64,000 nucleotides of DNA from Macrostomum lignano (lineage: Eukaryota). The notes beneath the pieces were generated by a model. That model did no database searches. It was not told where the DNA came from and was given only the letters and a program-made list of their open reading frames with translations. Where the stretch lies: the NCBI GenBank assembly GCA_002269645.1, contig NIVC01000721.1, positions 62,001-126,000 of the forward strand, written 5' to 3'. A program made the position numbers and the translations under genes. Of the stretch, positions 7,337 to 49,254 are shown piece by piece (within the stretch, counting starts at the first letter, position 1; the number at the start of each line of letters is the position of its first letter).

Positions 7337-8424
7337 AGTATATCAAAGATTATCATACTATTACAACATGGTCATAATTCACAACAAAGCACATTTAAAT
7401 TATGTTGAAATATCTAATATAAGTTATGTTATATAAGTGATATTATGTAAATAGATAACCAGAAATAAAAACAAATCTACATAAAATCAGGCAATAAAAT
7501 GGCATATTGTAGTAGCCTGTCAGTCTATAATTGGTATTCCTGCATGTTTAACTACTAGCTTGCCTAGTTGGGGGTTGGGTATACTTAGTTAGCCAGCCAG
7601 ACCAACTGATCTAAGTTGGGTTTTTCACTGACTTTAAAGCCTTTATTTTGATTATGCAACACCTTGCCTTTTAACTATCTTGCTCTCTTTAAGTAAACCA
7701 ACTTACCATTTTAGCACTTACTCAATCTGGGATATGCTTACTATTTGAAGGATGCTTGCTAGCTGAGTGATACTTGCTATGTAAGGGATGCTTACTATTT
7801 GGAAGGATGCTTGCTGTCTAGGAGACACTTTCTTTTTAAGGGAAATGCCTGCTATCTTTGTGAAGGCTTTATTTTGTTGTGTCCTTTTGTTACTTTTAGA
7901 AAAAAAGAGATTCATAGCAAACATCTTTATCTGTGTCAATTTTACTTGAATAAGGTGATTTATTAAACCAAAGAAAGAAATTATTTTTAAGAAATTGTGT
8001 TTTTTAATGGATTTGTGTTAATCATTTTTGCTCTTTGCTTGGTTGCCCCAAATGTGGCACTAGATTGCTAGTCAATTATGTTCATTTCTCATTTGGCCTT
8101 GCCTAATATATGCGAGCTGTCAAAATATTAGATTTTATTTACCATGATGTATAGTTATATAGTTAACAAGACAGATTAGTAGGAGAATATTTGATGGAAA
8201 TAAAATAAAAAAATTTGAAAACTCAGACATGATTTGAAAATTTTAATAAATGATCAATTAATTTTATGGAATCTTATACTCGTAGACTTACAACTTTTAA
8301 ACTTTTTTTTTGAAAGGTCTATTGTGCATTATTGTTTCTCATGTAGAAAACAGTTTAAAAAGATTGCTTTATACTTTCAATACTTTTACTGATTTCAGAT
8401 GACATAATACCCAGTACTAATTCA

Positions 8425-11400
8425 ATGCCATCAAAAAATCGAAACATAGGAGTTGATTGTGGAAATTGTAGCAAACGTTTGCTCCCCGCAAAGTTTGTTT
8501 GCTTTTTCTGGAAAGCAAAGAATGAAGTATATATATCAGTGAAAAACCAATTCAAAGTAGCTGCAATGGCTAGTTTGTACATTGAAAAGGTAGGAGCAAA
8601 GGATGAAGTACGATGTCAATTTTGCAATGCCAGTGTTGGAGTTCAGCTGCCATTCGGACCGCATGGTTCGAATTATATCTCATTAGGAAAGAAAAAAGTC
8701 ATTGTTGGAGGGATTCAATGTGAGCCAAACGACAAAGTTTCCCAGAAATTGATACCACGGCTAAAGAAACAAATCGATGAGGTGAACATGGACACCTTCT
8801 ATGGCAGATCAATAGTCCCTGATTTCGGCAACTGGTCCAGTCTAATAGCTCGCCAAGTCCCAGTTCAGTTCGCTTCGCCCTCTGCTCCTGAGCACTTCGA
8901 CTGGTCCGACCTCCTTGTATCGGACAAAGTGCCACGGACCTACCAGCTGGAGGCTTTCGTTGAGGCACTTCAGCGAGATCTTGTACTGGTGCTGCCCACT
9001 GGCTCAGGCAAGACGCTGGTGGCAGCTCTGCTGCTGGCTCGGATGCGAGCTCTGAACCCGGGACGGATGGGGGCCCTGCTGGTGGAGCGAGTGCCGCTGG
9101 TGTTCCAGCAGGCCAAGGCGCTGGAGGCGGACACTGGGCTAAAAGTGGCCGCGCTGTGCGGAGAAATTATGACCTCTTGGAAAATTCGAGAACTTCTTGA
9201 TGGAGCGCATGATTTGGTAAGCAATCTTGTTATTTTTAACTATTTACCCAAGTCTCGTCTCTCTTAACAAAAAAGCTTTTCCGGATCGTTTTAGGTGGTG
9301 ATCACGGCAGGCGCCCTGCTCTCCCTAATTACTAATCGGCGAATTCCAGACTTGAGCGCGTTTTCATGCATTGTAATCGACGAGTGCCACCACGCGAGTT
9401 CCCCGCGGCACAACTTCCCGCGCGTCCTTAAGCTGAACCACCAACTGCCAGAGGATATGCGACCTCGTTTGCTAGGCTTGACTGCATCGCCTGTTGAACC
9501 TGGAGACGGCGATTCCGAAGGACAGAAGAAACTGCGTCGTCTTTTATCATTTTTTTCTCCTGATTGCGTTGCGTTCCGACCTGCAAAAGCAGAGGAGTCG
9601 GCCGTGCAAACAGTGACCAAGCTCTGTCATCCGTCCTCGCTGCAGATACAATTCGCTGAGGACCTTAGCAAACTTTTAACAGATAGCAACGAAAAACTGA
9701 ACCTTGGCCTACCGATCGGAGAGTCGATGCCTGTGCCAAGCAACCGGCTGCGCATGCTGGCTGGTCAGCTGCGCGGCTTCATCTATAGCGGCCTGCCACA
9801 ATTTCGAAACAACCGAGAAGAGATTCGCGACCTGCTGTGTCTCCTGGCCGCCATGGAAGCATCCCAACTTGTTGGCGTCTCAAAGGCAGCCCCTTTTCTC
9901 GACGACCTTCGCTGCATTTCCACAGCCACCATGCGATTTCGCTCTGATCCAAACTGGCAGCTGGATGTTTCTGAGCGCATGCGGGTGGTCGAAGCCGAGG
10001 CCGCATCGCTGTTGCAGGTCGAGAACAAAGAGTCTCGACTTCTCGTGCTGACGTGGACTCGCCGAACGGCCCGACTGCTGCACGCGCGCCTGTCCGAGCT
10101 CTTCCCGAACCTCAGGCCCCAGCTGGTCGTAGGACGTGGTGGCGCAGACGGCATGGACTGGGACGGCGAGCAGTCAGTGGCTATCGACAGCTTCAATGAC
10201 GGCAGCAGTCGTCTGATTGTGAGCACAGCAGTGCTGGAAGAGGGTCTCGACGTCAGCGCGTGCGACGTTGTTATCAGGTTCGATGCAGCCAAGTCGCTTG
10301 TGCAGCTGTTGCAGAGCCGCGGCCGGGCGCGCAAAAAGGACAGTCGGTTCTTGATGGTCGTCGATGAAAACGAAGCGGCCGCTGCAACTGATTTGAGCGA
10401 AAGAGAAAATATGCTGAACCGTGTGGTGGACGATCACTCGCTTGAAAACGGGGTTCCATCCGAGCTGACGCGGCAAATGGTAAAGCATTTGGCTGAACGA
10501 AAGAGCCCTGTGCAAGCTGCTCGATCTGTTGTAGCTCACTACTCAATGGGATTGACGGGCAAAATGGGAGGCCAGATAATGGTCCAGCTATGCTGCCCCG
10601 AGTTGCAGAGGAAAGACTGCGATAAAGAAGCTTTAATGCTAAGTATTGAGAAAGAAAACTTCGTTAAAGTTCGCTCCATCGATTTGCTATTTGATCAGTG
10701 TGAGAATCATTCTTTGCCTTCTGGGTTGTTTCCACGAGACTCAACAGTCGCTGCCGTGTACTTGGAAACGCACTCAACTTTAGATTCTCCTCTTGGCATT
10801 TATCCCGAATTCGCGCGTCGTTGGTCATTCGAACTGAACAATAAGCCAATTTATGCGATGCCAGACGTGCGAAAAGTGGAAGATTCGGACGATGATTCCA
10901 TTAAAAAATCCGAACGAACAGTTCAGGCTCTTAGTTCCGTTGCTATTGGCCAGTTTCAGACAAAAACTAAAGTAGTTGAGGCGTTGCATATTTCGGAAGA
11001 AAATATCGAATTAGAAATAGATTCTAATCGCAATCTCATTTCAGTATTTTTTCGTGCTGCTGGAGTTTCACTGGTAGTATCAAGCATTGGTGGAACTAAC
11101 GGGTTTGCAATGGTGGACTGGTCCAAAGAATTGATTGCTTTACCTTTGGCAGTAGCGCCAACTATTCTAAAAACTGTGGAACAGGAGGATCAGCAAAACG
11201 ACTGGGATTTCAATCCGATTTCTTCTGAAAGCTTTTGCAACACTGAAGATCTTTCAGGAAAAATTCGTCAGAAATTTGAAACCAATTCTGTACTCATCCT
11301 GCATCTACCAAGAGCCCCTCGATCAGCTGAGCCCCTCGACTGGATGAGACTCCGTGCGACGTTTCCTCTGCCGCTGCTCGATACCCGACTTGAGTCCGAA

Positions 11401-14400
11401 GAGTATGCCTCCCCAGGGGAAAGTGAGACGCTCTTCGAATACTGTCATAGAGTTAAGCCATTCCAGGAATTGTCCGTCCGTGACAAAGCAGAGTTCCAGT
11501 GCCGCTGGCAAATGCAGGCTCTGATTGACAGCCGTCGCTTCCTCATCACTCAAGAATCAGCTGCAGGTATTGAAAATAGAATCGCAGCAGCTGCACAAGC
11601 AGACTCTAAACTCGATAACGACTGCCCAACAAACCTCATTAAACTGGCCAACGCACTGTTGACGTTGTCGGCTACTGGGGATGGCGAAGCCTTCTTTGAA
11701 GATGTGCTTGGAGACCGGCTGAACTCTGCGCTTATTGTTCTCGAGGTGACCGATGAGGATGCGGAAGACGCTGCTGTCGGTCCGCCAGTTGCATGTGGCT
11801 CAGTGCTCGTGAAGCGAGCTGCTGTGACTCCAACAAGAGTGGTATTGTTCCCCGCCACTCCCGTAGCATCGAGTCGCCTTCTGCGTCGGATCCCTCCAGA
11901 AAGACTCGTGATGGTCGCCTTCACCGACGAGTCATGCGGAGTCGTGCGAGGCGGCGGCGTCAATGTTGCCTCTGCTGCTTCAGTCGGTGCTCGATTCACC
12001 AAAGTGCTGCGGGACGGTCTGACTCTGGCCGGACGGAGGTACCGGTTTTTTTCGGCAAGCAGCGGTCAGCTACGAACGAGCCGGTGCTTCTTTGTGGCCG
12101 CAGAGTCTGTCGAGGAAGTGCAGCGACTGCGAGACCAGCTGGTCGAGAATCCGACAGAGTTCCGATCGGTTTCCAAATATCTGTCTCGACTGGGACTTTT
12201 CATACAGCTGACACATGGGTAGCCAAATTAGAGACCAACCAAGTATCGAAATGTATTGACCATCGAGCTCTCAATGACGACCTTCTGACGGACGGTGAGT
12301 ATCAGTTCGTGCATGTATATGAGCTTTAATGTGCATTGTGCACAGCAAATTTTGACCTCGCAAAGCATTCGCACATTGCAGGAAGCGGGAAAATCAGCTC
12401 AGAACTCGCTATGTCAATTAAATCCAAACTGGACCTGCCAGAGCTACCGTTTGCCTTCCAATTTCGCTTTGGTGGAGCCAAAGGAGTCCTGACCACTGTC
12501 TCCGATAAGGACCCAAATCTAGGACTTCAGCAAGGAATCTTGCTGAGACCATCCACTGTGAAGTTCAAAAGCTCAGACACAAACTTGTGCATTGTCGGAA
12601 CGTCTCAGTGCGGTAGACTTTGCCTCAACAGAGAGATCATCACTCTGCTGGAGGCGCTGGCCTCCAAGTGTGACAGCTGGAACCCGTCGCAACGTCTGCG
12701 AAACATTCTCGACGCGGAACTGCGAAAAATAGCCGAGTCTCTAGCGACTCCTTCGGCAGCCACCGCGGCACTTCGAGAATTTATTGACAAACCGAGCTTG
12801 GCAACAGCGAGTGTTGTGGAAGCTGCGCGACACTTCAACTTTCTGACCGATCCGCACTGGCTCGGTCTGCTGCGATGCGTTTTCCGATTTCGGCTGTCCG
12901 ACCTGCAGAAGCGAGCTGCTCTGCCAGTGGGCGACCTCGGTTGTCGCGTAATGGGCGCACCTGATCCGCTAGAAGTGCTGGCTGAGGGCCAGGTGTTTCT
13001 TCGAATCAAGCGGAAACCCAGTGATCAGGCTAAGCAGATTGAGGGTCCAGTGCTGATATATCGAAACCCATGCCTGCATCCGGGAGACGTTCGAGTGGTG
13101 CAGGCCGTGGCCAAACCGCAGCTGTGTGGGTGGCTTAACCTGCTGCTGCTTCCTTCGCGCACTGACTGCCGCCGCTCACTGGCTGCCGATTGCAGCGGCG
13201 GTGACCTCGACGGAGACCAGTTTGGAGTTGTGTGGGACCCGGAGCTCGTGCCGCCTCTAGAGGCAGTCCACGAACCTCTGGACTATGCGAAGCTGGCATC
13301 AAACGAGCCACAGCTACCCGAAGGAGCTGACGTTACGAACCCAGTCTTGCTGGCCAACTTCTGCGCACAGAACTTTGCGAACAGCTTTCTTGGTCGAGTA
13401 GCGAATTTGCACCTGGCCATTTGTGATCAGCTGCCTGGTGGCGCCCTCAACCAGTTGGCGATCGAAGTTGCAAAGGCTCAATCGGTCGCAGTCGACTTTC
13501 CAAAGACAGGAATCGTACCGGAGGTGCCTGAAGCAGCAGTAAAATTCGTTAAAGAGAAAGGCTACCCAGACTTCATGGAGCGCTCTGATTCCTACCCTTC
13601 AGATAAGCTTCTGGGTCAGTTGTACCGAAGATGCCGCTCCTGCGACCTGGATTGGGATCTGCTGGACTCGATCGATCAAGAAAATCAACAGTACGAGTAC
13701 GATGTGACATGGGCCGGTCAGGAGAAGTTTTTGAAAAGCGCCAGTCGGCTGTTTGAGCTCTACCGCTCTGATCTGCGGGCACTGATGTCGCAGTGGGGCG
13801 CAAGAAGCGACAGGGAGCTGCAGCTCGGTCGCTGCTTTCAGTGGCACCCGCTGCTTCGAACAGATCGTGGTCGCGCTCACATAGCCATGCGGCAGGGGTT
13901 TGACGCTTTGGGCAACAAGTACCGGCGAATATTCGATCAACTTGCTGGGGACGACCAGAACAAACGCAGAGCTCAGGCAGCTGCATGGTTTGCAGTGGCG
14001 TACAAAAGTGTCGGGACCTCGAAGGCGAAGAAGCCACGAGGTTTAAGTTTCCCGTGGGTCGTGACCGACGTTTTGTGTGAAATTCGGTCTCACGGCATGT
14101 CGACCTCTGTACTGCAGACCGGCAGCGCGTCACTGCAGTCAATTGATGAAGGTCTCGAAGTGTCGATCGGTCGCTCGGTCTTTGCCTTCTTCCGCAAATC
14201 TCTTCCGGGTCTGCGCGATGCAGTCGGTCGTGCCGACGCAGCCGCCGCACTGGTCAGCGGTCGCCTGTCCAGCAGTGTGCAGGAGTGCTCAGTTGCAAGG
14301 TGTATGGCTCAGCCTCGATTCTTGTGTGTGATGAGGCTTCATCAGACATCGACTTGTGTGTGCTACCTCTTGATAAAGCGTACTCTGAGCCGTGGCTTCC

Positions 14401-17400
14401 CGCAGAGGTTTCTGTACTGGGAGAATGCGCTCGCCATCGTCATTGGCTCGAGACGCTTGTGTGGCCCTCACTGGATGCTGCAGTGTTGGAAAAGACTCGA
14501 TACCTCGATCGCCAAGTTCCGTTGATTCGATGCCGTCTTGGACTGGACGGCGGTGAGGACGTGGATGATGGCCAGGAGTGCGACATCAGTATGAACAGTG
14601 TAGGTCTGGGAAAGACGCGCTACCTTCTCAGCTTGTACAGTCGCTGTCCGTGGCGGCTACCTTTGCTGTGGCTGCTGGTTCAGTGGGCGAGGGCAGCTGG
14701 AATCGTTCGGTCATCAAGTGAGAGCCAGGGCTGATGCCTACAGCCGAGTTTTACGCTCTTGTTCTGCATTGCTTTTCTGAGTTCGACGAAGTCGCAAGCA
14801 ACTTCGAGGAAAGTAATAAATGTCTGCTTGATCTATCATTGTCTGAGCGCCTAGCTTTTTGATGGACCGGCTGACTGATAAAGCTTCGGATGCGAATTTT
14901 GCCTTTTTGGGCAGCTGCATACTACGTTTTGTTCGGTTTTGCAGTGAATTGTCCGGTGCCGTGACGTACAAGTGGCAAAGAGTTGAATCCGCTTCATCGG
15001 TTCAGATTTCGGCTGAGGTCGTTAGAGGCGTGGCGGAACTTGCGGACGTTGCCTCTCGCGTTCTCGTCTACACCCACAGCGCAGCGTCCATTGTGTCTTC
15101 CGCCGCAATTATTTCAAGTCTCTCTGGAAAAGCCATTCGGCTGACACAGCGTTTGCCCGGAATTTTAAGCACTGAAATGTTGCGATCCCTTCGCTTTCAC
15201 GAGACACGTTTGCGCTTGACTACCGGATGTGATTCTGTACAACTGGAAGAGACCACAGGATCGCGCCGACTTCTGATACGGGCAATCGGAGCCCCGTCAG
15301 CTATCGATCGCCTTCGACATGAACTCCGCGAACTGTCTGCTAGATTTGGCTTGTCTGGCAGCTGGACGAGGAAGTACAACAACGGTTTGCGCTACTTTTT
15401 GGAGGGAGGTGGAACCGTCATGGCCACTCGATGTCTTTCAAACAGTTGTCGGATCGAGCTAATTGATCACCTTGGCTCAGTGAATGTTGAGCATCAAATG
15501 CATGATGTTTGCGTTCCGCTGTGTCTCGGGACGGATGGTATTGATTTTACATCATGGACAGATGAAGCCGCGCGTCGCTTATTCGCTCTGATGTGTCGCC
15601 AGTTTTCTCGCCTGCGATCATCCAGGTCTGAATGCCAAGTTTCTGCAATGCTAAAAGACCTGGAACTTTCAGTTCGCGTTGGCCGAGTTTATTTCCTAAA
15701 CGCAACTAACGGTCTTCCTGACAACCGCCGTAGCATATCTCTAGCTGAGCTGGCAGTAGCACTGGCGGCCGGTAAGAAGTTCCGCAAGGGTTGCGAGCGA
15801 CCCGACTTTCGTCGCCGCGATGCCTCCGATGCCACTAGAAAGCATCGCGCAGAGAAAATGGTTAGTCTTGCGGCTCCTGGCGGCGCATCTCAAGAGCCTC
15901 ATCCGCCGCTTAAACCGGAACGGGCTCCGAAGCCAAACCGTCGAAAGAAATACAAACTAGGCGTTGGCTTTCTAGCTGGAATTGTTGCGGATCTGCATCG
16001 AATTAGCACCGGAGCAACCGTAGAAGTCTACGAGAAGGCCCTGAAATCATTAGGCTATGTAGAAATTCCTAAACAGACAGAGCCGGCTCTGACCGGCTGG
16101 AAGGTGTCCGTGCGCTTGAGCGCTTCCTATCAGGCTCACCTGCAGCATGATCTTTCATTGCAGCTAGTGCGAGTCTACGAGCGACCGCTGAATTGTATTT
16201 ACATGAATGTGCTAGACTCTGATAGGCCTGGCGAGAGAAACTCAGCGATTACAGCCTCCAGCACAGCTGACTGTGAAACTGGAAGTCCAAGTGAAGCCAT
16301 CGGATTGGAAAATGCGCCGAGTGAAAAATCGAACTCGCACAAACAGAAAAAGAATAGAAAATTCAAACGCAAGCGCAAAGGCGATAAAAAAGATGGAGAT
16401 GAGTATTATCTCGCTGGTGCGGAACAATCTGCTCGGGATGCAACTCAATCTTTGGACAGAAGAGACGATTTCATTGAAACTCAGGGAGCCGCTGAAACAC
16501 AAACGGTCAGCTCAGGCTTAACAGAGCAGAGGCAGAGCACCAATGTGATGGATGACAGCGCCTGTAGCAATTTAGCAGGCAAACAAGGTAAGACACAAAT
16601 GAAGTCAAAAGGCGTTGTTGCAACCGCTGGAATCATGGAAACTACTTGCGAACAGCGCAAATGTCCAGAAATCGATTGGAGTATACTAAAACATCGAACA
16701 TCAAGAAAGAAAATTGGTGCATGCATTAAAGTCAAAAGCGGAACTGAAAATCTTACAAATGTCAGCACAACCGACGGTGCAACCTCCTCTGAAGTTTTCA
16801 CCGAGGTCGCAACTGGTTGCAGCACTAGCAACGAAGGCTCGTCAGCTAAGACCAACCAGAGGGGTCAAAGAGGTCAAGAACGCGGCCCAAAAGCAGCTGG
16901 CGTAGTGGAAGCTAAAATAGATACGGAAAGTGTGGAATCCTTGGCAGAATCCAAAAGCGACGCGGAACGCTCAGGTGCAGCAGTGAACGTTTTTTCGAAT
17001 GAGAAGAAATCCAATAAAAACTTCACTTTGATGACTCCTGAAAGTGAATTCTCAGCAACAAGCAGACAGAGTGTCGGTGGTGAAGTGGTAGATGCCGCAG
17101 CTGCAATGCCTCCCAGCGAGTTGACTAAGAAAGATGGCAGACGCCAAAGAAAAGCAGCGTCGAACAACAAATCTTCAAGCAGTGTCGATCAGAGACAAAA
17201 GTGCGCCAATGAAGCCGAATTCTGCGGACGACCGAGCACAGTTGATGCCAGCGGCAGAGCTGCAGCTGCCGGCTACCTGGAGCAGCTGGACTTGCACATT
17301 AACCTGGCCGCGTGCGAACCAGTCCGCCCGAGCATGCACCGGGAACTTTTCCCAGACGGTGAAGAGTTTCCCTATCTGGTCCGAGATCCAACCACTGGCA

Positions 17401-17741
17401 AAGTAGTGATCAGCGACCGGGTGCCAAAGTCGCTGACTGTCCTGGTGACGCGTCAGCGGTCGGTTGTTCGTCAATTTCGCCGTTCGAGCAGCGACGCCGA
17501 AGATGTTTGGCCGGAGTTGCGCATCATCAGCGGCTCGCTGCACTTTGGCGGCGACCAAAATCTCGAGGCGCAGCCGGTGTGCGATTTGTCGATGCACTTT
17601 GACCCAGCGCCGCTGCTGACGGCGGCACAGTACGGTCGGTATGGCAACCTCAGCGGCTACTGCAGACGCCTGATGCAGCTCAGCTTGGAACTGACTAGTG
17701 CGCTCAAGGAGCAAATCCGGCTGGCTGCTGGTGATGGTTAG
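8425..17741 (+). CDS. Large fusion protein (~3,050 aa reconstructed): Zn-binding module + Dicer/RIG-I-like DExH helicase + cellular RNA-dependent RNA polymerase + Cid1/TUTase-like nucleotidyltransferase + unassigned C-terminal region
   Basis: Exons 8425-9216, 9295-12294 and 12382-17741. Intron 9217-9294 (gtaagc..ttttag) joins GAHDL|VVITAG; intron 12295-12381 (gtgagt..ttgcag) rebuilds the RdRP motif LTDG|SGKISSELA. Four -1 frameshifts (~12199, ~14283, ~14730, ~14860) must be corrected for a continuous frame. Confidence 0.85.
8930..10350 (+). other. SF2 DExH helicase domain of Dicer/RIG-I-like type (within the fusion gene)
   Basis: Q motif PRTYQLEA; Walker A LPTGSGKT (8995); Ia VERVPLVFQQ; II VIDECHHA (9379); III LGLTASP; V STAVLEEGLDVSACDVVIRFD; VI QSRGRAR (10312). 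No RNase III, PAZ or CARD motifs were seen. Confidence 0.93.
11810..13950 (+). other. Cellular (QDE-1/RDR/EGO-1-type) RdRP catalytic domain (within the fusion gene)
   Basis: VKRAAVTPTRV, RRYRFFSASSGQLR, SRLGLF, LTDGSGKIS, FQFRFGGAKGVL, YRNPCLHPGDVR, catalytic SGGDLDGDQFGVVWD (DLDGD at 13203-13217), QSVAVDFPKTG, YPDFMER, SDKLLGQLYR. Confidence 0.96.
14285..14960 (+). other. Pol-beta-family terminal nucleotidyltransferase, Cid1/GLD-2/TUT-like (within the fusion gene)
   Basis: KVYGSASILVCDEASSDIDLCV matches G[GS]x9-13DxD (Asp codons at 14345 and 14351). It is followed by VPLIRC, the third Asp in ECDISMNSVGLGKTRYLLSLY (14582), LWLLVQWAR and GLMPTAEFYALVLHC, the motif order seen in Cid1/TUT4/7. 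Confidence 0.85.
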
Positions 17742-19799: not shown

Positions 19800-21870
19800 C
19801 CTGGGACTTGGCTTACTTGACTTAGCTGCAGGGGGCGTCCGGCGGATGCCGCTAGGAGGCGGAAGCCCCTGGCAACCAATGACTTCCATCGAAGCGATGT
19901 CGCTCAGAGGGACCCGTCGGTCTCGCCTGCAGCGCGGTCCTCCTCACCGGCGGTGGGAAGAAGTCAGCTCGTCCCGTGTCCCTGAGGTACCGGGCGAGCA
20001 GCGGGATGCTCTCGGGCCTGCAAACGTCGGAGAGAACCGGGTTTGGCCCCGGGTGAGTGAGCCTGGCCCTGGTGAAACCGGGCAGTGGCAGATAAAGTGC
20101 TCGGCGTTTTCACTGCCTGAGCGGCAGAAGGGGCACCGCTCCTCGGGTACCTGGCCCTGAAGGAAGCGGTGGCGAGAGAAACAGTCATGTCTGGAGAGGG
20201 CCATGCTAACTGCTCTGAGGTCTCTGCGGTTGAGCCTGAGGAGAGCTCACGCAAGAGAGGAGAGGGGCAGGGGACGGCAGCACAGGATTGCCTACAATTC
20301 CGGGTGTCGCGCCACCTGCGGCGGTGCTCGGAATCAGCCCAGTGCTTAACATGGGAAATGATCACCGAGGTGGGGATGAAGGCCCCTGGGCCCGGCCCCA
20401 GCAGCGCGCCGGCGGAGCCAGCCTTAGCCAGCAGGTCAGCGCGCTCGCTGCCGAGGAAACCAGCGTGGCCCGGGATCCATCTGAGCTCCACCTGGTTGCC
20501 TAGCGCAAGCCCATTGAGCTGGACATTGCAGTCCTGCAGGACAGATCTGGAGCTGGTGGTGCTGTGGCAGAGGGCCCGAAGGGCTGCTTGGCTGTCAGAG
20601 TGAAAAATAAACTTCCGACCGCTGAGCTGCCTTCGGCGCAGCTCTGCCGCGCAGGAGCTGATGGCAAGCACCTCGGTCTGAAAAAACACTGGAGTTGAGT
20701 CCAGTGTGCTGGGAGTAGCTCCACACTACTTCTCCCTTGAAGAAGACGCAAGCTCCGAAGCCTGAAAGACCATGCCGAATAGTGACCTTATACCAGGTAC
20801 CTTTGGCTCAGGAGAAGGGTGGCTGGGATCGAGTCCGTGAGGATGTTGAGCCCGCCACACTCCTCGAGAGCCTTGAGGCAGAGGTCAGAGTGCGGGATAA
20901 GCGACCGCTTCTTAAAGGCCCGCACTTTCTTGAAAGCCACGCCAGCATCTAGAAGACGCCGGGTGCTCTTCGCCGCCTCTCCTTTGATATAAATATCCAG
21001 AGGAATGCATTCATGCCTTCAAAAGGGATGAGGGTGGAGCGCCCATAGTCATGCGGCAGGCTCTGCCCTGGATTTTGTAGAGAGCGTCGAGGTTGCTCTT
21101 GACGCTCAGGCCGCTGGCCCATACGAGGCTGGCGTAACTGATCGAGGGCGGATAATGGCTGTGTAAATCCAGCACAGCTTCCTGGGGGTGAGCCCCCAGG
21201 TGGTGCCCACGGCGCGCCTGATTTGAGCCAGGACAACCAGGGCTTTTTGGCTTTAGTTTGAATGTGCGGAGTCCAGTTTAACCTGTGGTCCAGAGTGAGA
21301 CCCAGGCAGCGGACCTGCTTCTCCATGGTATTATGCTTTCCATAGAGGGTGAGTGGGTTCATGGTCCAGAGCAGTTTGTTGGTAAAAATGACCGCTGTGG
21401 TTTTCGACTCTGAGAGTCTAAGGCCAGATTGGCTTGCCCAACGCTCCGCTCGTCTCAGAAAGCCCTGCAGAAGGTCTCTGGTGGTATCAACCGAGGGGCC
21501 CGCGCACATCGCGGTCACATCATCGGCATAGCCTTTATGTGACCTTGAGAATGGGGTCATGGAGATCACTGCAAAGCAACTCATCCATGACCATGTTCTA
21601 AAGAACGGGGTGAGAACCCCGCCCTGGGGGCCCCCCTGGACAGCAGGACAGGCGCCGTAAGAGAGCTGCCGTTCAGGTGGGCCACGACAGTGCGGTTCCG
21701 GATCATGAACATGATCCACCAGACAAGGTGAGGGTGCATGGCCCTGGATTCCAGGGCTCTGCAAAAGGCCTCGAAAATGACATTGTCGCCGCCTGGGACA
21801 GCACCTAACGGCATCATGTCTGGCGTATGGCTTGCATGAGTTTAGAATTCGACTCATCGATATGTTGATT
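19800..21870 (-). mobile_element. 5'-truncated, frameshifted non-LTR retrotransposon with RT, RNase H and C-terminal zinc finger (I/R1/LOA-like group)
   Basis: RT motifs PQGGVLTP, YADD and LGLTLDHRLNWTPHI. RNase H FHSDSQAAL..LRWIPGHAGFLGSERADLLAK. C-terminal CPFC..EHFICHCP. Split over several frames. Confidence 0.9.
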
Positions 21871-26847: not shown

Positions 26848-29800
26848 TGTTATGACTTCTTCTCTAGCGGAAGACAGTGAGTCAAGATCAACAAAGTCAA
26901 CTTAAAAGTTGCACTCTTAGCAGAGCGTCTTATTTCATGTTCGTAACCTTCTTTTTTTATTTCCAAGCTTGAAGCATCGCTTCTTTAGCTTATGGCTGGG
27001 TGTGTGTGCGACTGAGTCGTCTATGGCCACACCCAACATCTCCCCCCTTACAATGGCAAAGAAAGTTTTTTTTTTAAAGTTAATGCGGGAGGAACAAATT
27101 TTAGCACTTATAGTTAACTTTGGGTTTCTCCGAAAGTCGCATGCTTCTCCTGGGTTCAATAGTACCCTCGGGAACCTCAGGGATCGGAGGTGTACGCAGA
27201 TCCTTTTGTTGTGGAGGCTCCTCTTCTTGTTTTCTCCCTGCCGCGTGCTCGCCAGCTCCGGGTGGCATTCTGTCGGTTTCTGCGGGCTCCTCGCCGGTTA
27301 GACTGTACGGATGTAGCTGATCCAAGTGAACCTTCCGATACTTTGAGTTCGGTTCATCTGTCTTGATCATGGCCATGCTCCTTCCAATAGGCAAAAGCAG
27401 TTTTGCAGTGATTGGCTTGTCTCTCTCATTTTTGTAGATAACTGGATCCTCCAGTCCAACTTGCCTCTTGGTAAACGGAACCCTGAGCTTGTGCCCCAGC
27501 AGCTGTTCTGCTGGTGACGATCCCGCTTTGTTGTCTGATGCGCGATAAAACAGCAAGAAGCGGTCAACAGACTCTTGACTGAAGCCATTTGCCTTGATGC
27601 TTTCTTTTAGCGTGCGTACGAAACGCTCTGCAACCCCATTACTTTGTGGGTGATAAGCTGCGATAGTTAGGTACTCACAGTCAATTCCTGCCAACCACTC
27701 TGTAAAGTCCTTGCTGATAAAGCATGGTCCGTTATCTGACACAAGTGTCCTTGGAATTCCAAGCTGAGAAAACGTCCTTCTGACGCACTGAATGACAGTT
27801 CGAGAAGTCATATCTTTGGTGACGTGGACTTCAGGATACCCGCTGTACGAATCTACCAGAACGAGCATGTAGTGGTTGTCGATCGGTCCTGCAAAGTCGA
27901 TATGAACACGATCCCAAGGACCCGCAGCTTCAGGCCAACTGGAGCGAAAATTTCTATTTTGCGGTTTTGCGGTCCTACAGATCTGGCACAAACCGACTGT
28001 CCGTTCGATATCGCTGTCCATGGCTGGCCACCAAAACTCCGCGCGAGCCAAGGACTTGGTGCGGGACATTCCCAAATGAACTTCGTGCACTGCTGCAATC
28101 GCTTTCATGCGTAAGGATTTTGGAATAATGATCCTGTGGCCTCGAAGAATAACATCGTCCTGAACGCAAAGTTCTTCTCGCACATTTTTGAAAGGTCGCA
28201 GTCTAGGGTGTTTGAAGCTTCCTGTCTTTATAGCGCTCTTCAGCAAGCGCATTTCGTTACACCGCTTCGTTGCTAGCCTGATTTCTTCCAGAGACACTGT
28301 AGTTGAAACCGTGTGAATGTTACCAATCTCTAGCGTTTCACCGCTTCTTCCTTGCGGAACCAATCTTGAGAGCGCGTCAGATGCCATAGCTTTAGATTTT
28401 CGATACTCGATCTCGTAATCGTACGCCGTGAGAAATATCGCCCATCTCTGCAGCCTTGCGGACACTCTCGATGGTAGCTCTTTGTCACAGGCTAAGATGT
28501 AAACGAGAGGTCGATGGTCGGTTATTAGCTTAAATTTTCTGTCACAGAGAAAACGATGACATCTTCTAACACCCCATATTATCGCAAGCGCTTCTCGCTC
28601 TATTTGCGAATAATTTCGCTCCGATGATGACAAAAGTTTGCTGATGTACAAGACAGGACGTCCTTGCTGACTCAGGACACCACCAAGGGCAATCTGCGAA
28701 GCGTCTACTTCGAGCTCAACCGGTAGCTTTGGGTCGTACGCATGCAAAGCAGCGTCTTCTGAAAGTGATTTCTGGATGTTTCTGAACGCATCTTGTTCTT
28801 TTGTGCCCCAACGAAACTCCACACCTTTGCGCTTCAGGTGCACCAACGGAGCCGATATTCCAGAAAGGTTTGGAATGAATCACGAGCAGAACGTAATCAG
28901 TCCGAGGAAGGATTCTAACTCGGAAAGATTCTTTGGAGTTTCCATTTCTTTGATCGCCCGCACTTTCTCTCCATCAGGATAAATGCGACCGCTGTCCAGA
29001 ATATGACCCAAAAACCGGACTCGAGATAAGTTCCGTTGGCATTTCTGATCATTTACCTTTAGCCCTTCCGATGCTAGACGGTAAAGTACTTGTTCTTCGC
29101 GTCCTTTCAACTCTGACTCATCGCTTCCACCAATTAATATATCGTCCATGTACGCTATTGTTCCGGGAATACCTTGGATCACTTGCGATATATACCGTTG
29201 GAAAATACTCGGAGCCGTTTTTATTCCAAACACAAGTTTATTGTACTTAAAATTTCCAAATTGTGTCGACATCACGGTTAGCGGTTTAGATGCATCGTCC
29301 AGCTCTACTTGGTTGTACGCTTTCTCTAGATCGATGATACTGTACCGAAAGCATCCCGCCACTGTCGAGAACGCTTCCTCCGGGGTCGGTGTCGGGTAGC
29401 TATCCGGGACCAGCTGTTGATTAAGCGTACTCTTATAGTCCACACATAGCCTGATACTGCCGTTGGGCTTGCCGACTACCACGACTGGAGACGCCCATTC
29501 CGAGAATTTCACAGCTTCGATTATACCTTCATCAAGTAAGCGATCCAATTCCTTTTTTACTGCTTCACGTTGAGCAAATGGTAACGGTCTTGCTTTTACA
29601 TACTTTGGTACTGCTCCGTCTTTAAGTTCCAAATGAGCTTTCATTGTAGTTGCACTTGCTGCCAGAGATGCCATATCCATGGAGACGTCCCCATTATGTC
29701 CTGTGTCCAGCTGTACACAGAGAACATCTCGCCCCAGCAAGGCATAGCTCTTGCTGCCTTTCACTACCTCAAAGTCGATGCGCTGATATTTTCCATTCAG

Positions 29801-31260
29801 TTCTACCACAGCTTCGTATCGACCTAATACCGTGAACTTGTGATCACTTACATAGCCACCCAGTTGTGTATTTGAGTTCTTAAGAGCTGGTCGACCCAAC
29901 TGTTTCCAGAGGGATTCTGACATTATGGACACACCCGCTCCAGTATCCAGCTCGCATGTCAGCGCGTATCTCTTTTGCCCTTCTAGTACGGACACTGTGA
30001 TGGAGATAGGCTTTCGGTGATCCCGATCTGGGCAGCAACTTTGCACTTCAGCGACAAATACTTCGGAATTTTCTTGAACATGTTTTACTGTTGATTTACT
30101 CGTGCCACCGGTCTTTCTATGTGAAAAGTCTGAGCCTCTGCAGGCTTTGGCAAAATGATTAGCCTTGCCACACCGGTTGCAGGTCTTACCATACGCTGGG
30201 CATTTAAACTTTTCATGATTGCCGCCACACTTCTTGCACAGCCGATCCGCCACTGCCGGAGTTTTGAAATCCTTCGACTTGGACCCTGGTTTCCGCGTTG
30301 AGACTTTCAGAACTGTTCCAGAATCTGATTTCGGAGTTGTCTTCATTATCTGCGTTTCCAGCAAACTTGAATGGGCTTCTGCTTCTGCTACCGCCTCTTT
30401 AAATGTGAGTGTTTTATGATCCTTGGTGATCAGCTTTCCAACTATGGCTTGACTGCCAAGACCGCATATGAATTGGTCACGCATTCTCACATCTCTGTTT
30501 TCAAACTCACATTTCTCAGATGCTTTTATTATTCTTTCTGCAAAAGCTCTTACCGGCTCATTGGGTTCACGGCCAATTTTTTGAAATGTAAATCTTTCGG
30601 CCAACACATATGTCGTGGGTATTAACAGTTCTTGTAGTGCTCCTGTTAGTTCCTCAAACGACATCTTGCCAGGCTTTTTTTGGAGACACATAGTCCGCTA
30701 GCTTATTGTAGAGAGCAGGTGACATTCGCATCAGCAGGACATGAGCTCGTGCAGATGCGTCCCAGTTAAATAGGGTGGCTCCGATCTCAAAACGGTCGAG
30801 CCAACGATCCAGAATGGTTGACTCCTCCAACCTTTCAATCTCAGACATACCTGAGGTTTGGCGACTGCTCTGAGTGGCGTTCTGGGCTTGAGCATCCCTT
30901 TCAGTTGCTTGGGACTGTGACCGGTTTTGAGAACCTCCTCCATTACGGCTTGGAGAGATCCCAGCAGACTTGGCCGCTGACTTCGTCGGATCTGCAGACT
31001 TCGTCGGATCCTTGCTCATTATGAGCTTGAACGTCTGACCGTCAGGTTACGATTGCTTGCGACGCCACTGTTATGACTTCTTCTCTAGCGGAAGACAGTG
31101 AGTCAAGATCAACAAAGTCAACTTAAAAGTTGCACTCTTAGTAGAGCGTCTTTATTTCATGTTCGTAACCTTCTTTTTTTATTTCCAAGCTTGAAGCATC
31201 GCTTCTTTAGCTTATGGCTGGGTGTGTGTGCGACTGAGTCGTCTATGGCCACACCCAACA
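26848..31260 (-). mobile_element. Young full-length Ty3/Gypsy LTR retrotransposon, Mag clade
   Basis: LTRs at 26848-27038 and 31069-31260 (TG..CA) differ by one substitution and one homopolymer indel. 5-bp TSD cactt at 26843-26847 and 31261-31265. PPT (taaggggggaga on minus) next to the 3' LTR; tggcg-type PBS next to the 5' LTR. Gag has two zinc knuckles, followed by PR (LDTGAG), RT (YMDD), RH (DASQ) and IN (HIDFAGP, YHPQSNGVAER). Confidence 0.97.
27101..31019 (-). pseudogene. gag-pol ORF of the Mag element, interrupted by one frameshift and one nonsense codon
   Basis: An extra A in an A7 run at ~30675-30681 separates VSPKK from PGKMSFEEL. An in-frame TGA at 28880-28882 lies within LITFCS*FIPNLS, where Arg (CGA) is expected. 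Confidence 0.88.
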
Positions 31261-32200: not shown

Positions 32201-34217
32201 AGCACACACCACTGCTGTGCTGGGCGCCTTTTCTTCCTACTTTTTAGGAAGCCACCAAGATATCTTTAGGATAGCTCCAGAGGTATTCACAGGAGCTATT
32301 CGTGTTCACCTATCTAATAGGCAGGATGCCTCTGCCTACAAGACAATACTTCTCATCATACACTTCTGCCTCAAATTCAGCACAGAAAAGCAACAAGCAA
32401 AAGTTCAAATCCTATCCAGCTACTGAACAAAGGATCAGACCGCACTAAGTACACCCGATAAGAGAAGGCCTCTCTGCACCCAACCAGTCTGAGTACCAAG
32501 CTGCCGCGGTGACCAGGAATCCCGCAGTGACTGAGACAACCAGACAGGGGTGCTGCTGCTGCTTTTAGGTGATGTAGTTCTAGGGCGTTTCACCGACGGT
32601 AACATGCAAGACGCGTCTCAGGCGCGCATCCGGAAGCGTTTTCGGAGCAGGTTGCATGGAGATTTATCAGGCGTGGTTAGCAATCCTACTGATCCTCACT
32701 GCGGCCGCCAAACCACCTGAGCGGAGTCGATGGGATCAGACAGCTCGGATGTCTCTATAATACGCGTACGACGCGGTGCTATTCGGCGGCTTGTTGGGAC
32801 GGCGTACGACGCTCTAATCCCGCCTAGGCCCTAAGCAACCAACTCCAAAGGAACAGTATAACAGAAGGCTCAAGGTTTTCAAAGCAACGGTGGCAAATTA
32901 ACGCACGGATGCACTTGGTATATTTCCTCCTCGAGGCGGCGGAACGCGGCACAGGAGTGACGGGGGACGGAGGTTACATAGATGACGTAACGCAGAGATA
33001 ATATTGCAGGAAGGCCCAATAAATAGTCGGGCCGCCCGGGGTGCAGGACAGAAAGTTAGATCGCAAACACAAAGGGCTTAGAGCAGACATCTAATTCCCA
33101 AGGACCACTAGGAATACTTCACTATAAATCTAGTCTAGTAGTCCTTGCTAATTCACAATTGCCAAAACTGCACAAGGATCGATTGAGGGAGGCATATGGG
33201 CTCAACCAGTCCCAGCGCCTGAAGAGACCAGATAAAACTGCGAGTAGACGAGGAGAGACTAAACGGCTCTGGCCAATCGCAGGGCTGCCCATAGGCTCAC
33301 AAAAATGGGGGCGCAGGACTGGAGACGCCGGGATGAAGCGAAATAGAGCTTGCCCTATTTGGGCAGAGGGGAGATTCGGAGAGGCGACTCACAACAGTGT
33401 TAGTCGGAGTGGGGAGTAAGCCGTGCCGCCTCCCTTACATAGTCTTCCGGCGGCCTATCGGTTATACCCGCGTCGTCAAGTTTTCTGATTGGACGAGCCC
33501 GGGATGACTAGCCTGACTCTGATTCGCAGAGCTCCAGATCCCAAACCCTCTCCACCCGCGCCACCTCTCAGACACGCCAGGGAACTTGATAGGTTGCGGT
33601 CATAAATCATAAAAAACAAGATAATACATGTACAGTACGTAAGATCTATATAAAAAACGGTCAAAACTGTGAAAAAGCAGACTGAGGATTACTTTTCCAG
33701 GCTCTTTAGCACCAAAAGTGTCAGGTAGGTGGATCGTATGTAAATCAAAATTAGCCCAGACAGGTTGGACCTCCTCCTGACCTGGTGGCAGATTTCGGCT
33801 AGAAAAGTCCTTTCCAGCAGAAAACTTCGGCTAATTTCGTAATCTTGATGCATTTTAAAATGAACTTCGGTTCCAGTTTCGAGTTTTCCAGTTTTTATGC
33901 GAACTAGAAGTTCTCCATTATTTTGATTGCGAACTCAGCTGACCTGGACTGAAGCTCGCTCGAACAGCTGGGCGAAATTCTCTTCAAGTAGCCGAGCCGA
34001 GTCCTCAGCCGACAAGCGGTTGTCATCCACTTGTACTGGGAATGATCTGCAGATCAGATCGTGAGCTCCGATGTCCACGTAGGCGTGTGTGTACTCGGGG
34101 CTCAGTGGCATGGGCACGGCCATCACTGCGCCTCGATCTGTGAGAAATCCGGATCCAGGAAAAGCAATGTGCAATTACGGACCTTTACGGTGCAAATATG
34201 TACATTATTATGTACAT

Positions 34218-34889
34218 CAAGGGTCGGCAAACTTTTTCAACGTTTCAACGTAAGGGCCAGATATAAAATTTAGCGCATGACTGCGGGCCAGAGAGAGAGG
34301 AGAGAAGAGAGGCAATAGAGGAGGAAAAGGAAGAAAAGAGGAGAGAGAGAGGAGATGAGAGGAGAGTGGAGATGAGAGGGAGAAGAGGGAAGAGAAGGGA
34401 GGCGTGGGGAGAGGGGAGAGAGGCAAGATGAAGTGAGAAAGGTGAGAAGATAGAGGAGAGGGGAGAGAGGGTCGAAGGGGGAGAGGAGGGAAGGGATATG
34501 AGAGGGGAGAGGTGGGAGAGGAGAGAGGAGATAAGAGAGGAGAGTGGAGATGAGAGGAGAGGGAAGAGAAGGGAGGCGTGGGGAGAGGGGAGAGAGGGAA
34601 GATGAGGTGAGAAGGGAGAGAAGAAAGAGAAGAGGGGAGAGAGAATCGAAGGGGGAGAGGAGGGAAGGGATATGAGAGGGGAGAGGTGGGGAGAGGAGAG
34701 AGGCGATATGAGAGATGAGAGGGTAGATGAGTGGAGAGAGAGAGAGAGAGAGAGAGAGGAGGGATAGGAGACCCCGGAGGAGCGGAGAGAGGAGGAGAGG
34801 AGACCTGAGAAGAGACACAAACCTTGAGCGGGCCGGATTGCTATTGTGAAGTTTCAAAGGACCCGAGGGCCGGAGTTTGCCAACCCCTG
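34218..34889. mobile_element. hAT-like non-autonomous element containing a ~530-bp GA-rich low-complexity expansion
   Basis: TIRs caagggtcggcaaact (34218-34233) and agtttgccaacccctg (34874-34889), 14/16 complementary and of CAGGGGT.GGCAAAC hAT type. Subterminal gcgggcc motifs. No clear 8-bp TSD. Confidence 0.65.
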
Positions 34890-49199: not shown

Positions 49200-49254
49200 T
49201 GCTGAAATTGACCGAATGCCAATAAAACTGTTAGATAAAACGTTTGACGATGAT

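What the first reader, a model, noticed from the sequence alone, without database searches (positions are those of the whole stretch)
14285..14960. Cid1/TUTase-type nucleotidyltransferase directly C-terminal to the RdRP
Seen: all three predicted catalytic aspartates (SDID, ECDIS) and the GS motif are present, ~350 codons after the RdRP DLDGD, entered through one -1 shift at ~14283. Established: this family adds U, A or alternating UG tails, and pUG tails direct RdRP activity in nematodes. Inference: the enzyme may mark templates or products in cis. Nucleotide specificity cannot be read by eye because the nucleotide-recognition motif region is divergent and frameshifted.
Basis: partly seen in the sequence, partly recalled or inferred. 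Interest (0 to 1): 0.8.

Follow-up and report, generated by a model that had tools for sequence, protein, structure and literature searches.

The report
RNA-tailing enzyme fused to flatworm RdRP
A flatworm (Macrostomum lignano) gene joins a Dicer/RIG-I-type helicase, a cellular RNA-dependent RNA polymerase, a Cid1/GLD-2-type RNA-tailing enzyme and a KH-like RNA-binding domain in one protein, so the RNAi "RdRP complex" that other organisms build from separate proteins is here a single chain, and the same fusion occurs in Hydra, an acoel, brine shrimp and dinoflagellates.

Summary
The window carries a Pol-beta nucleotidyltransferase module at 14142-14996, with the GS motif, the DxD pair and the third Asp, 368 codons after the RdRP DLDGD.

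It belongs to a three-exon Macrostomum lignano gene (8425-17741, two GT-AG introns). Domain order is Dicer/RIG-I-like helicase, RdRP, non-canonical poly(A)/(U) polymerase (TENT), KH-like domain, then a conserved region of unknown function.

- **Family conservation:** 27 relatives keep G, S, S, D, D, D invariant.
- **Sequence similarity:** a family profile hits GLD-2 (E 2e-11), CutA, Tailor, TbTUT4 and Cid1.
- **Fold:** an AlphaFold model (pLDDT 91) matches CutA, MEAT1, TUT7, Cid1 and GLD-2.
- **Fusion elsewhere:** Hydra, Convolutriloba, Artemia and dinoflagellates have the same fusion in intact proteins.
- **Sister contig:** it reads RdRP and NTase in one 1106-codon ORF.

The window copy has four single-base frame changes, three of them in the NTase module, and no premature stops. 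This looks like long-read homopolymer error or very young decay, not a programmed shift.

Function as a single-chain RDRC that tails RNA 3' ends beside its own RdRP is inferred. Nucleotide specificity cannot be assigned. I found no paper describing the fusion. I rate it a new variant of a known kind.

The parts
8425..17741 (+). Whole gene: M. lignano helicase-RdRP-NTase-KH gene, locus BOX15_Mlig023635g3. It has three exons. This copy carries four single-base frame changes, one in-frame 21-nt length difference and no premature stop by substitution.
   Evidence: Protein P0172 (PAA77828.1, 'partial') is encoded exactly by its first 1247 codons. The full-length sister model P0173 (3058 aa) maps along the whole span.
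9217..9294 (+). Intron 1, 78 nt, GT..AG.
   Evidence: Removing it restores an exact match to P0173. Among the equivalent placements, only this one has canonical ends.
12295..12381 (+). Intron 2, 87 nt, GT..AG.
   Evidence: In the sister contig the called gene is 87 nt longer than its coding sequence.
8932..10330 (+). Dicer/RIG-I-like (DExH) helicase core, with motif I GSGKT at 8992-9015 and DECH at 9379-9390.
   Evidence: Pfam DEAD, ResIII and Helicase_C. PDB hits are Dicer, DCL1, LGP2, RIG-I, MDA5, Dicer-2 and Dicer-related helicase, E 4e-23 to 5e-11.
11824..13631 (+). Eukaryotic cellular RdRP domain (PF05183), with catalytic DLDGD at 13203-13217.
   Evidence: Pfam E 4e-91 for the core piece and 2e-116 in P0173. 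Best solved relatives are Arabidopsis RDR2 (E 8e-69), with QDE-1 far weaker.
14142..14996 (+). Non-canonical poly(A)/(U) polymerase (TENT, Cid1/GLD-2-type) module: catalytic palm plus helical central domain.
   Evidence: Alignment A1, profile against PDB, AF2 model with pLDDT 91.2 and Foldseek. Domain bounds.
14303..14317 (+). Helix-turn GS motif (YGSAS).
   Evidence: G56 and S57 are invariant in 27 of 27 relatives.
14342..14353 (+). SDID: first two catalytic aspartates.
   Evidence: S68, D69 and D71 are invariant.
14576..14590 (+). ECDIS: third catalytic aspartate. It is followed by the family-invariant G and K.
   Evidence: D148, G155 and K158 are invariant.
15129..15356 (+). KH-like domain (beta-alpha-beta-beta-alpha; family motif TGAxV). 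The GXXG loop is degenerate in M. lignano.
   Evidence: In AF2 model m6c252dd416a7, residues about 15-90 have pLDDT 76-93. The Foldseek top 30 are almost all type I KH domains, TM about 0.7 on the target, but with weak E-values of 0.009-0.3.
15357..16235 (+). Conserved C-terminal region of unknown fold, with invariant Y, H, W, Q, G, Y, R and K.
   Evidence: Alignment A2. No Pfam or PDB sequence match. The model has low confidence here.

Best explanation
The interval encodes the catalytic and central domains of a Cid1/GLD-2-type terminal ribonucleotidyltransferase. It is part of one very large cellular gene of Macrostomum lignano.

**Shown.**
- Domain order is Dicer/RIG-I-like helicase, RdRP, NTase, KH-like domain, conserved C-terminal region.
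- The catalytic residues are family-invariant.
- The fold is a bilobal TENT fold.
- The same architecture exists as intact proteins in cnidarian, acoel, crustacean and dinoflagellate genomes.

**Inferred.** The protein is a single-chain version of the RdRP complex (RDRC) that fission yeast, ciliates and nematodes assemble from separate helicase, RdRP and NTase subunits.
- The helicase engages or remodels the RNA.
- The NTase adds a short untemplated tail to an RNA 3' end held nearby, with the KH-like domain helping to hold single-stranded RNA. My best guess is that this is the template end, which would define where the adjacent RdRP starts.
- The RdRP then makes the complementary strand that feeds small-RNA production.
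- Which nucleotide is added is not predictable.

**State of this copy.** The window copy carries four single-base frame changes. They are most likely homopolymer errors of a long-read assembly, or else very recent decay of one of several near-identical copies. They are not a programmed shift.
For: **Identity of the domain.**
- G, S, S, D, D and D are invariant in 27 relatives.
- The family profile hits GLD-2 at 1.9e-11, CutA at 1.6e-10, Tailor, TbTUT4 and Cid1 at 6e-7. These alignments run through both lobes.
- The AF2 model has pLDDT 91.2 and pTM 0.89.
- Foldseek top hits are CutA, MEAT1, TUT7, Cid1, TbTUT4, Tut1 and GLD-2.

**Fusion.**
- The sister contig reads the RdRP core and the NTase in one ORF of 1106 codons. 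Its NTase piece matches the window's at 148 of 149 residues; the one difference is the ORF's initiator codon.
- Of the 51 representative clusters, 13 run helicase-RdRP-NTase (12 of them with KH) and 12 run RdRP-NTase-KH, always in that order.
- Named members are Hydra vulgaris, Convolutriloba, Artemia, Prorocentrum/Polarella and Effrenium.

**Other domains.**
- The helicase falls in the Dicer/RIG-I clade, which includes Dicer-related helicase.
- The domain after the NTase is KH-like.

**Precedent for RdRP-NTase partnership.** Rdp1-Cid12, Rdr1-Rdn1/Rdn2 and Paramecium Rdr-Cid are described in PMC4066745. The MUT-2 poly(UG) model is in 10.1101/422972.

**Frame changes.**
- All four are one-base deficits relative to the full-length sister model P0173.
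- All nine single-base differences from the sister contig lie in homopolymer context and go in both directions.
- Every frame segment is open, so there are no nonsense substitutions.
- Substitution divergence is 0.30% in the gene against 1.17% in the flanks.
Against: - There is no activity, expression or small-RNA evidence here. The in-cis tailing role rests on analogy.
- The window's own piece is below the Pfam gathering score.
- Pfam's PAP-associated model was not among the families returned for any of the 27 relatives at E <= 0.01.
- The nucleotide-recognition region is non-canonical. An invariant Lys sits where GLD-2 has Asn in the profile alignment, and a W-P strand replaces the usual pattern. 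A non-standard substrate cannot be excluded.
- Three of the four frame changes cluster in 9% of the coding sequence. Homopolymer density there is no higher than elsewhere, so random error does not predict this.
- GenBank annotates this copy only as a 1247-aa partial protein that stops before the RdRP core.
- Orthology to Cid12, Rdn1 or RDE-3 could not be tested.
Confidence: 0.7

Rival explanations
1. The window copy is a decaying pseudogene. The NTase module is being lost in this copy, and whatever function exists is carried by the other M. lignano copies.
For: - This copy has four frame changes, three of them in the 0.86-kb NTase module. That gives p of about 0.004 under a uniform model, and there is no excess of homopolymers there.
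- The public annotation of this copy is a truncated partial protein.
- The locus sits in a transposon-rich region.
Against: - There are no nonsense substitutions in 9.15 kb.
- All four changes are one-base deficits in homopolymer context.
- The sister contig has its own cluster of such deficits in a different part of the gene. That is the usual picture of long-read consensus error.
- Coding divergence between the copies is a quarter of flank divergence. Among anchored coding differences, synonymous outnumber non-synonymous 13 to 5, with 10 more unassigned.
Confidence: 0.25
2. The Pol-beta domain is not an RNA-tailing enzyme. It is instead a nucleotide-second-messenger or oligoadenylate-type synthase (cGAS/OAS-like), coupled to an RNA-sensing RIG-I-like helicase as an immune sensor.
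For: - The N-terminal helicase belongs to the RIG-I/MDA5/LGP2/Dicer clade.
- The base-recognition region is non-canonical, with an invariant Lys in place of the usual Asn.
Against: - Every significant sequence and fold match is a TENT: GLD-2, CutA, Cid1, the TUTases and mtPAP.
- No cGAS or OAS entry appears in the profile-search table, which lists all 35 matches at E <= 1, or among the 50 best fold hits shown.
- The domain is fused to an RdRP and a KH-like RNA-binding domain, which fits RNA 3'-end chemistry.
Confidence: 0.04
3. The NTase fold is kept only as a structural or RNA-binding scaffold within the RdRP protein and has lost catalysis.
For: - The M. lignano sequence is the most divergent family member downstream of the palm. 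The family W-P is W-Q here, and the KH GXXG loop is lost.
- Pfam scores for the M. lignano sequences are low.
Against: - The GS motif, all three Asp, and the G and K after the third Asp are invariant in 27 of 27 sequences, including M. lignano.
- That degree of conservation across animals and dinoflagellates is hard to explain without catalysis.
Confidence: 0.08
4. The helicase-RdRP-NTase block is part of a mobile or virus-derived element rather than a host gene.
For: - It forms a GC-rich island (51-59% GC) in AT-rich flanks.
- The neighbourhood is transposon-rich.
- The family has a patchy distribution across animals and dinoflagellates.
Against: - The gene has two short GT-AG introns.
- No terminal direct or inverted repeats flank it.
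- The RdRP is the cellular double-psi-barrel type closest to plant RDR2.
- About 2.3 kb upstream and 1.6 kb downstream are also shared with the sister contig at 99% identity, as expected for alleles or homeologues.
Confidence: 0.03

Closest known systems
Fission-yeast RDRC (Rdp1 + Hrr1 helicase + Cid12 NTase)
   Same: It has the same three activities: helicase, cellular RdRP and Cid1-family NTase. They work as one physical unit in siRNA production (PMC4066745; own knowledge for Hrr1).
   Different: In yeast these are three separate polypeptides; here they are one chain plus a KH-like domain. The helicase here is of the Dicer/RIG-I clade. Orthology of the NTase to Cid12 was not tested.
Tetrahymena RDRCs (Rdr1 with Rdn1 or Rdn2) and Paramecium Rdr/Cid pairs
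   Same: An RdRP is physically bound to a Cid1-type NTase with an intact Asp triad (PMC4066745). Template-end tailing influences RdRP initiation there; this rests on the title of the Talsky and Collins paper cited in PMC4066745.
   Different: The association there is non-covalent, with no helicase in the same chain. No Rdn sequence came back from my searches, so the relationship is untested.
C. elegans RDE-3/MUT-2 poly(UG) polymerase with RRF-1/EGO-1 and DRH-3
   Same: A TENT tail on an RNA 3' end is proposed to recruit the RdRP (10.1101/422972). DRH-type Dicer-related helicases are among the solved relatives of the helicase here.
   Different: These are separate proteins. Nothing here indicates UG specificity. 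Fontenla et al. found no RDE-3 orthologue in flatworms (PMC5594548).
Dictyostelium RrpA/RrpB/RrpC
   Same: A helicase domain is fused N-terminally to a cellular RdRP (PMC3661229).
   Different: These proteins are described as having a helicase and an RdRP domain only, with no NTase or KH part reported. Their sequences were not compared here.
GLD-2, CutA and Cid1 stand-alone TENTs
   Same: They share the bilobal fold, the GS motif and the Asp triad, and are the best sequence and fold matches.
   Different: Identity is only about 15-20%. Lys replaces the Asn after the third Asp, the recognition strand is shortened and altered (W-P), and Pfam's PAP-associated model was not among the families returned.

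Membership tests
Cid1/GLD-2-type non-canonical poly(A)/(U) polymerases (TENT, Pol-beta superfamily) | Helix-turn G[GS] motif before the first catalytic strand | tested here: met
   YGSAS lies at 14303-14317. G56 and S57 are invariant in 27 of 27 relatives.
Cid1/GLD-2-type non-canonical poly(A)/(U) polymerases (TENT, Pol-beta superfamily) | DxD pair plus a third acidic residue on the next strands | tested here: met
   SDID lies at 14342-14353 and ECDIS at 14576-14590. D69, D71 and D148 are invariant.
Cid1/GLD-2-type non-canonical poly(A)/(U) polymerases (TENT, Pol-beta superfamily) | Bilobal fold: catalytic palm plus helical central (PAP-associated) domain | tested here: met
   The AF2 model has pLDDT 91.2. 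Foldseek matches CutA, MEAT1, TUT7, Cid1, TbTUT4 and GLD-2 at probability 1.0 over 260-290 columns, TM about 0.5. HMM alignments to GLD-2 and CutA span both lobes. The model is of the sister copy's continuous sequence, not of the window's split frames.
Cid1/GLD-2-type non-canonical poly(A)/(U) polymerases (TENT, Pol-beta superfamily) | Passing the curated Pfam thresholds (PF22600 palm; PF03828 PAP-associated) | tested here: inconclusive
   The window piece scores 22 bits against a 27-bit cut-off. All 27 relatives match PF22600 at E <= 0.01, and several pass the cut-off: P0001 at 46 bits, Hydra at 41 bits. PF03828 is not among the four families returned for the 27 members at E <= 0.01.
Cid1/GLD-2-type non-canonical poly(A)/(U) polymerases (TENT, Pol-beta superfamily) | Recognisable nucleotide-recognition motif that assigns A or U specificity | tested here: inconclusive
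   PDB alignments stop before that region. The family has its own W-P strand (W279 invariant) and an invariant Lys where GLD-2 has Asn. The literature warns that the His rule is unreliable (10.1101/422972).
Cid1/GLD-2-type non-canonical poly(A)/(U) polymerases (TENT, Pol-beta superfamily) | Untemplated ribonucleotide addition to RNA 3' ends | not testable with these tools
   No activity or tail-sequencing data were available.
RdRP complex (RDRC) of RNAi | Cellular RdRP with the DxDGD catalytic loop | tested here: met
   PF05183 at E 4e-91. DLDGD lies at 13203-13217. The closest solved relative is RDR2.
RdRP complex (RDRC) of RNAi | Stable physical association of the RdRP with a Cid1-family NTase | tested here: met
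   The link is covalent. The sister contig has one ORF of 1106 codons covering both domains. The same order is seen in 25 of the 51 representative clusters and in named Hydra, Artemia, acoel and dinoflagellate proteins.
RdRP complex (RDRC) of RNAi | Associated RNA helicase | tested here: met
   A Dicer/RIG-I-like helicase with intact motif I and DECH is present. It lies in the same chain in 13 representative clusters.
RdRP complex (RDRC) of RNAi | NTase orthologous to Cid12, Rdn1/2 or RDE-3 | not tested
   None of these proteins has a solved structure in the hit list, and none came back from any search. Both word-index searches returned nothing.
RdRP complex (RDRC) of RNAi | Requirement for small-RNA production or silencing | not testable with these tools
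   There are no small-RNA or expression data here. Published surveys only list M. lignano RdRPs (PMC5594548; 10.64898/2026.03.11.711021).
Type I KH domain | beta-alpha-alpha-beta-beta-alpha fold with a GXXG loop | tested here: inconclusive
   Fold hits to hnRNP K, Nova, PCBP and FUBP1 KH domains have TM about 0.7 on the target but E-values of only 0.009-0.3. There is no Pfam KH hit. The family keeps the TGAxV motif, and the GXXG loop is degenerate or absent in M. lignano.

The most novel reading that the evidence does not exclude
The helicase-RdRP-NTase-KH proteins are an undescribed, ancient class of self-contained RNAi amplifiers. Their NTase would be a new TENT subfamily, marked by an invariant Lys in place of the nucleotide-contacting Asn and by a W-P recognition strand. 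Its tail would have unusual composition and be written on the template by the same molecule whose RdRP then reads it. Tail-directed RdRP recruitment, known in trans from nematode pUG tails, would then be hard-wired in cis in cnidarians, acoels, flatworms, crustaceans and dinoflagellates.
Probability: 0.25. Interest if true: 0.8.

Novelty: new variant of a known kind. Interest (0 to 1): 0.6.

Why it matters
RdRP, helicase and Cid1-type NTase are known to work together in fission yeast, ciliates and nematodes. How tailing is coupled to RdRP initiation is still argued.

A natural covalent fusion is independent ("Rosetta stone") evidence that the three activities form one functional unit. It shows that the unit predates or crosses the animal-alveolate divide. 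It also offers a single polypeptide in which the geometry between the NTase pocket and the RdRP channel could be seen directly.

The fusion bears on two further points. It explains why surveys found RdRPs but no RDE-3 orthologue in Macrostomum. It also adds Hydra, acoels and Artemia to the animals whose RdRPs carry built-in accessory enzymes, which matters for the open question of what animal RdRPs outside nematodes do.

Tried and rejected
**Dead ends**
- **Word-index protein searches.** Searches with the NTase piece and with the 27-sequence alignment returned nothing, although exhaustive HMMER found 51 clusters. As a result the nearest named TENT subfamily outside PDB (Cid12, Rdn1, RDE-3) could not be determined.
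- **RNA genes.** Rfam and tRNA scans of the window found nothing.
- **Terminal repeats.** A search around the gene, to test a mobile-element reading, found none.
- **Literature.** Seven topical text searches and a locus-tag search found no description of an RdRP-NTase fusion. The Burroughs, Ando and Aravind 2014 review, the most likely place for one, is not held. Prior description therefore cannot be excluded.
- **Region after the KH-like domain.** There is no Pfam or PDB sequence match, and the model has low confidence. Its fold is unassigned.

**Readings rejected**
- **Programmed frameshift into the NTase.** The sister contig and the full-length model read straight through.
- **Viral or transposon origin.** The gene has introns, a cellular-type RdRP and shared flanks.
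- **cGAS/OAS-type synthase.** No such fold or sequence hits appeared in the lists returned.

My first script for locating the exon junctions gave unusable output. An anchor-offset count replaced it.

Full report
**What is at the coordinates.** The + strand between 8.4 and 17.7 kb is a run of long open frames. Pfam reads them, in order, as:
- a DEAD/ResIII helicase plus Helicase_C;
- a eukaryotic RdRP (PF05183, E 4e-91 for the core piece);
- a weak match to the palm domain of mitochondrial-type poly(A) polymerases (PF22600, E 2e-4, 22 bits against a 27-bit cut-off), in the 149-codon frame that starts at the finding's start;
- a 960-codon frame with no Pfam match.

The RdRP DLDGD is at 13203-13217, 368 codons before the GS motif. 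The window holds no Rfam family and no tRNA gene.

**Whose gene it is.** An exhaustive HMMER search with the 149-residue piece found 51 clusters. The top hit is 100% identical: Macrostomum lignano PAA71720.1 (BOX15_Mlig023635g1). Its cluster also holds a 3058-residue full-length model (UniRef A0A1I8H5L0) and PAA77828.1 (g3, 'partial', 1247 aa).
- The g3 protein is encoded exactly by the window's first 1247 codons, so the window is that locus.
- The neighbourhood supports an animal genome rich in transposons. It contains a claudin-family gene, a Ty3/gypsy-type pol, another reverse transcriptase and a tyrosine-recombinase element.

**Gene structure and state of this copy.** Mapping the full-length model onto the window by exact anchors shows two extra blocks of 78 and 87 nt, four single-base deficits, and one in-frame 21-nt deficit in the low-complexity tail.
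- Both extra blocks are canonical GT-AG introns, at 9217-9294 and 12295-12381.
- One frame change lies in the RdRP domain and three in the NTase module.
- No segment contains a premature stop in its own frame.

I fetched the contig of the g1 copy (NIVC01001144.1). It is 99.0% identical to window 6.1-19.4 kb, flanks included.
- In that contig the RdRP core and the NTase lie in one uninterrupted ORF of 1106 codons.
- Its NTase stretch matches the window's at 148 of 149 residues. The only difference is the first codon, which the ORF tool renders as the initiator Met. The frame changes are therefore not a programmed entry into the domain.
- All nine single-base differences between the two contigs inside the gene sit in homopolymer context. 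In five the window is shorter and in four the sister is shorter.
- The sister contig has its own cluster of short deficits, but in the KH/C-terminal part.
- Substitutions are 0.30% in the gene against 1.17% in the flanks. Among anchored coding differences, 13 are synonymous and 5 are not, with 10 unassigned.

This pattern fits long-read consensus error best. However, three of four changes fall in 9% of the coding sequence, and homopolymer density there is no higher than elsewhere. Random error does not predict that, so a young decaying copy stays open.

**Is the domain a Cid1/TUTase-type NTase?** I aligned the module from 27 family members (about 23-31% identical to M. lignano).
- G56, S57, S68, D69, D71, D148, G155, K158 and W279 are invariant.
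- All 27 match PF22600 at E <= 0.01. Pfam's PAP-associated model is not among the families returned.
- The profile hits solved structures in this order: GLD-2 (1.9e-11), CutA (1.6e-10), Tailor, trypanosome TUT4, Cid1 (6e-7), MEAT1, URT1, TUT4, Trf4, and then canonical PAPs at non-significant scores. The alignments run through both lobes.
- AlphaFold on this alignment gives pLDDT 91.2 and pTM 0.89.
- Foldseek against PDB returns only TUTases and non-canonical PAPs at the top, at probability 1.0 and TM about 0.5. That TM score would be expected if the two lobes hinge relative to each other.

**Specificity.** The PDB alignments end before the nucleotide-recognition motif.
- In the profile alignment, the family's invariant Lys lies where GLD-2 has Asn. 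From my own knowledge, the corresponding Asn in Cid1 contacts the incoming nucleotide.
- The strand that usually carries the recognition loop is replaced by a short family-specific W-P element. M. lignano diverges further here.
- The TRAID-seq study itself notes that the histidine rule fails for several enzymes (10.1101/422972).

I cannot assign A, U or mixed tails.

**The rest of the protein.**
- The helicase is of the Dicer/RIG-I/MDA5/LGP2/Dicer-related-helicase clade (E 4e-23 to 5e-11). Motif I and DECH are intact.
- The RdRP is closest to plant RDR2 (8e-69) and far from QDE-1.
- Downstream of the NTase the family stays conserved for a further 240-370 residues, with no Pfam or PDB sequence match.
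- The model of window 15087-16235 is poor overall (pLDDT 59.6), but residues about 15-90 are confident. That part matches type I KH domains (hnRNP K KH3, Nova, PCBP, FUBP1) at TM about 0.7 on the target, with weak E-values of 0.009-0.3.
- The family motif TGAxV resembles the canonical KH signature as I know it. I call this part KH-like, not a proven KH domain.

**Distribution.** Of the 51 representative clusters, 13 run helicase-RdRP-NTase (12 of them with KH) and 12 run RdRP-NTase-KH. The rest are shorter proteins that match the NTase alone or NTase-KH, plus one long protein (2699 aa) that matches the NTase alone. The domain order never varies. Named members are:
- Hydra vulgaris LOC105846402
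- Convolutriloba macropyga LOC142349510
- Artemia franciscana LOC136030361
- Prorocentrum cordatum / Polarella glacialis
- Effrenium voratum

Pfam confirms the order in the intact proteins tested: the full helicase-RdRP-NTase order in the Hydra and Prorocentrum/Polarella proteins, and RdRP followed by NTase in the Artemia protein.

**How it most likely works.**
- Shown: the domains, their order, the invariant catalytic residues and the fold.
- Established elsewhere: RdRPs work in complexes with Cid1-type NTases (Rdp1-Cid12, Rdr1-Rdn1/2, Paramecium Rdr-Cid; PMC4066745). MUT-2 poly(UG) tails are proposed to recruit RdRP (10.1101/422972). Dictyostelium RdRPs carry an N-terminal helicase domain (PMC3661229).
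- Inferred: this protein is a single-chain RDRC in which the NTase, helped by the KH-like domain, tails an RNA 3' end next to its own RdRP. Most likely this is the template end, which would set the start of complementary-strand synthesis.

**Novelty.** Surveys of flatworm RNAi factors listed four M. lignano RdRPs and reported no RDE-3 orthologue, without noting the built-in NTase (PMC5594548). A 2026 preprint again only lists the RdRPs. The animal RdRP survey has no occurrence of 'helicase' or 'nucleotidyl' (PMC6396948). Seven topical text searches and a locus-tag search found no description of the fusion, but one likely review is not held. Databases call these proteins uncharacterised or simply RdRP. 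I rate it a new variant of a known kind. It is interesting as natural evidence for the RDRC unit and as a structural handle, not as a new principle.

Noticed in passing
window 27101-30691 (- strand): Two adjacent long ORFs of a Ty3/gypsy-type LTR retrotransposon pol. One carries aspartyl protease and reverse transcriptase, the other RNase H, integrase zinc-binding domain and integrase core. I did not look for LTRs, gag or the state of the reading frames.
   Followed up: no
window 19964-21857 (- strand): ORFs matching RNase H and part of a reverse transcriptase lie in a very GC-rich patch (56-65% GC), directly downstream of the RdRP gene's AT-rich flank. This is probably another retroelement fragment.
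   Followed up: no
window 38723-39445 (+ strand), perhaps with the adjacent ORF at 38056-38688: An ORF with DUF3504 and a phage-integrase-type tyrosine recombinase domain, as found in Crypton/DIRS-like elements.
   Followed up: no
window 48483-49715 (- strand): A 410-codon ORF with a PMP-22/EMP/claudin-family domain (E 3e-19). It is the only clearly host-type gene besides the RdRP gene.
   Followed up: no
window 34001-36000 and 48001-52000: Strong strand asymmetry, with GC skew of +0.33 to +0.38 in 2-kb windows. Overlapping long ORFs lie on the - strand at 50.7-53.3 kb. This may be low-complexity or repeat-derived sequence.
   Followed up: no
window 7726-7843: A short array of degenerate direct repeats with 18-nt spacing, about 600 nt upstream of the gene's start codon. 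It lies inside the flank shared with the sister contig.
   Followed up: no
window 16300-17400 (inside the gene's last exon): M. lignano has a Lys/Ser/Glu-rich low-complexity insertion of roughly 400 residues in the C-terminal part. The other family members lack it (alignment occupancy 0.06-0.25). The 21-nt in-frame length difference between copies lies in this C-terminal, post-NTase part of the gene.
   Followed up: partly
L001 (NIVC01001144.1), whole gene: The sister contig has its own short deficits, clustered in the KH/C-terminal part: three of 1 nt and one of 2 nt. Its annotated protein is therefore also truncated, and no single GenBank gene model seen here for this assembly (g1, g2, g3, Mlig005031g1) shows the full architecture.
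   Followed up: partly
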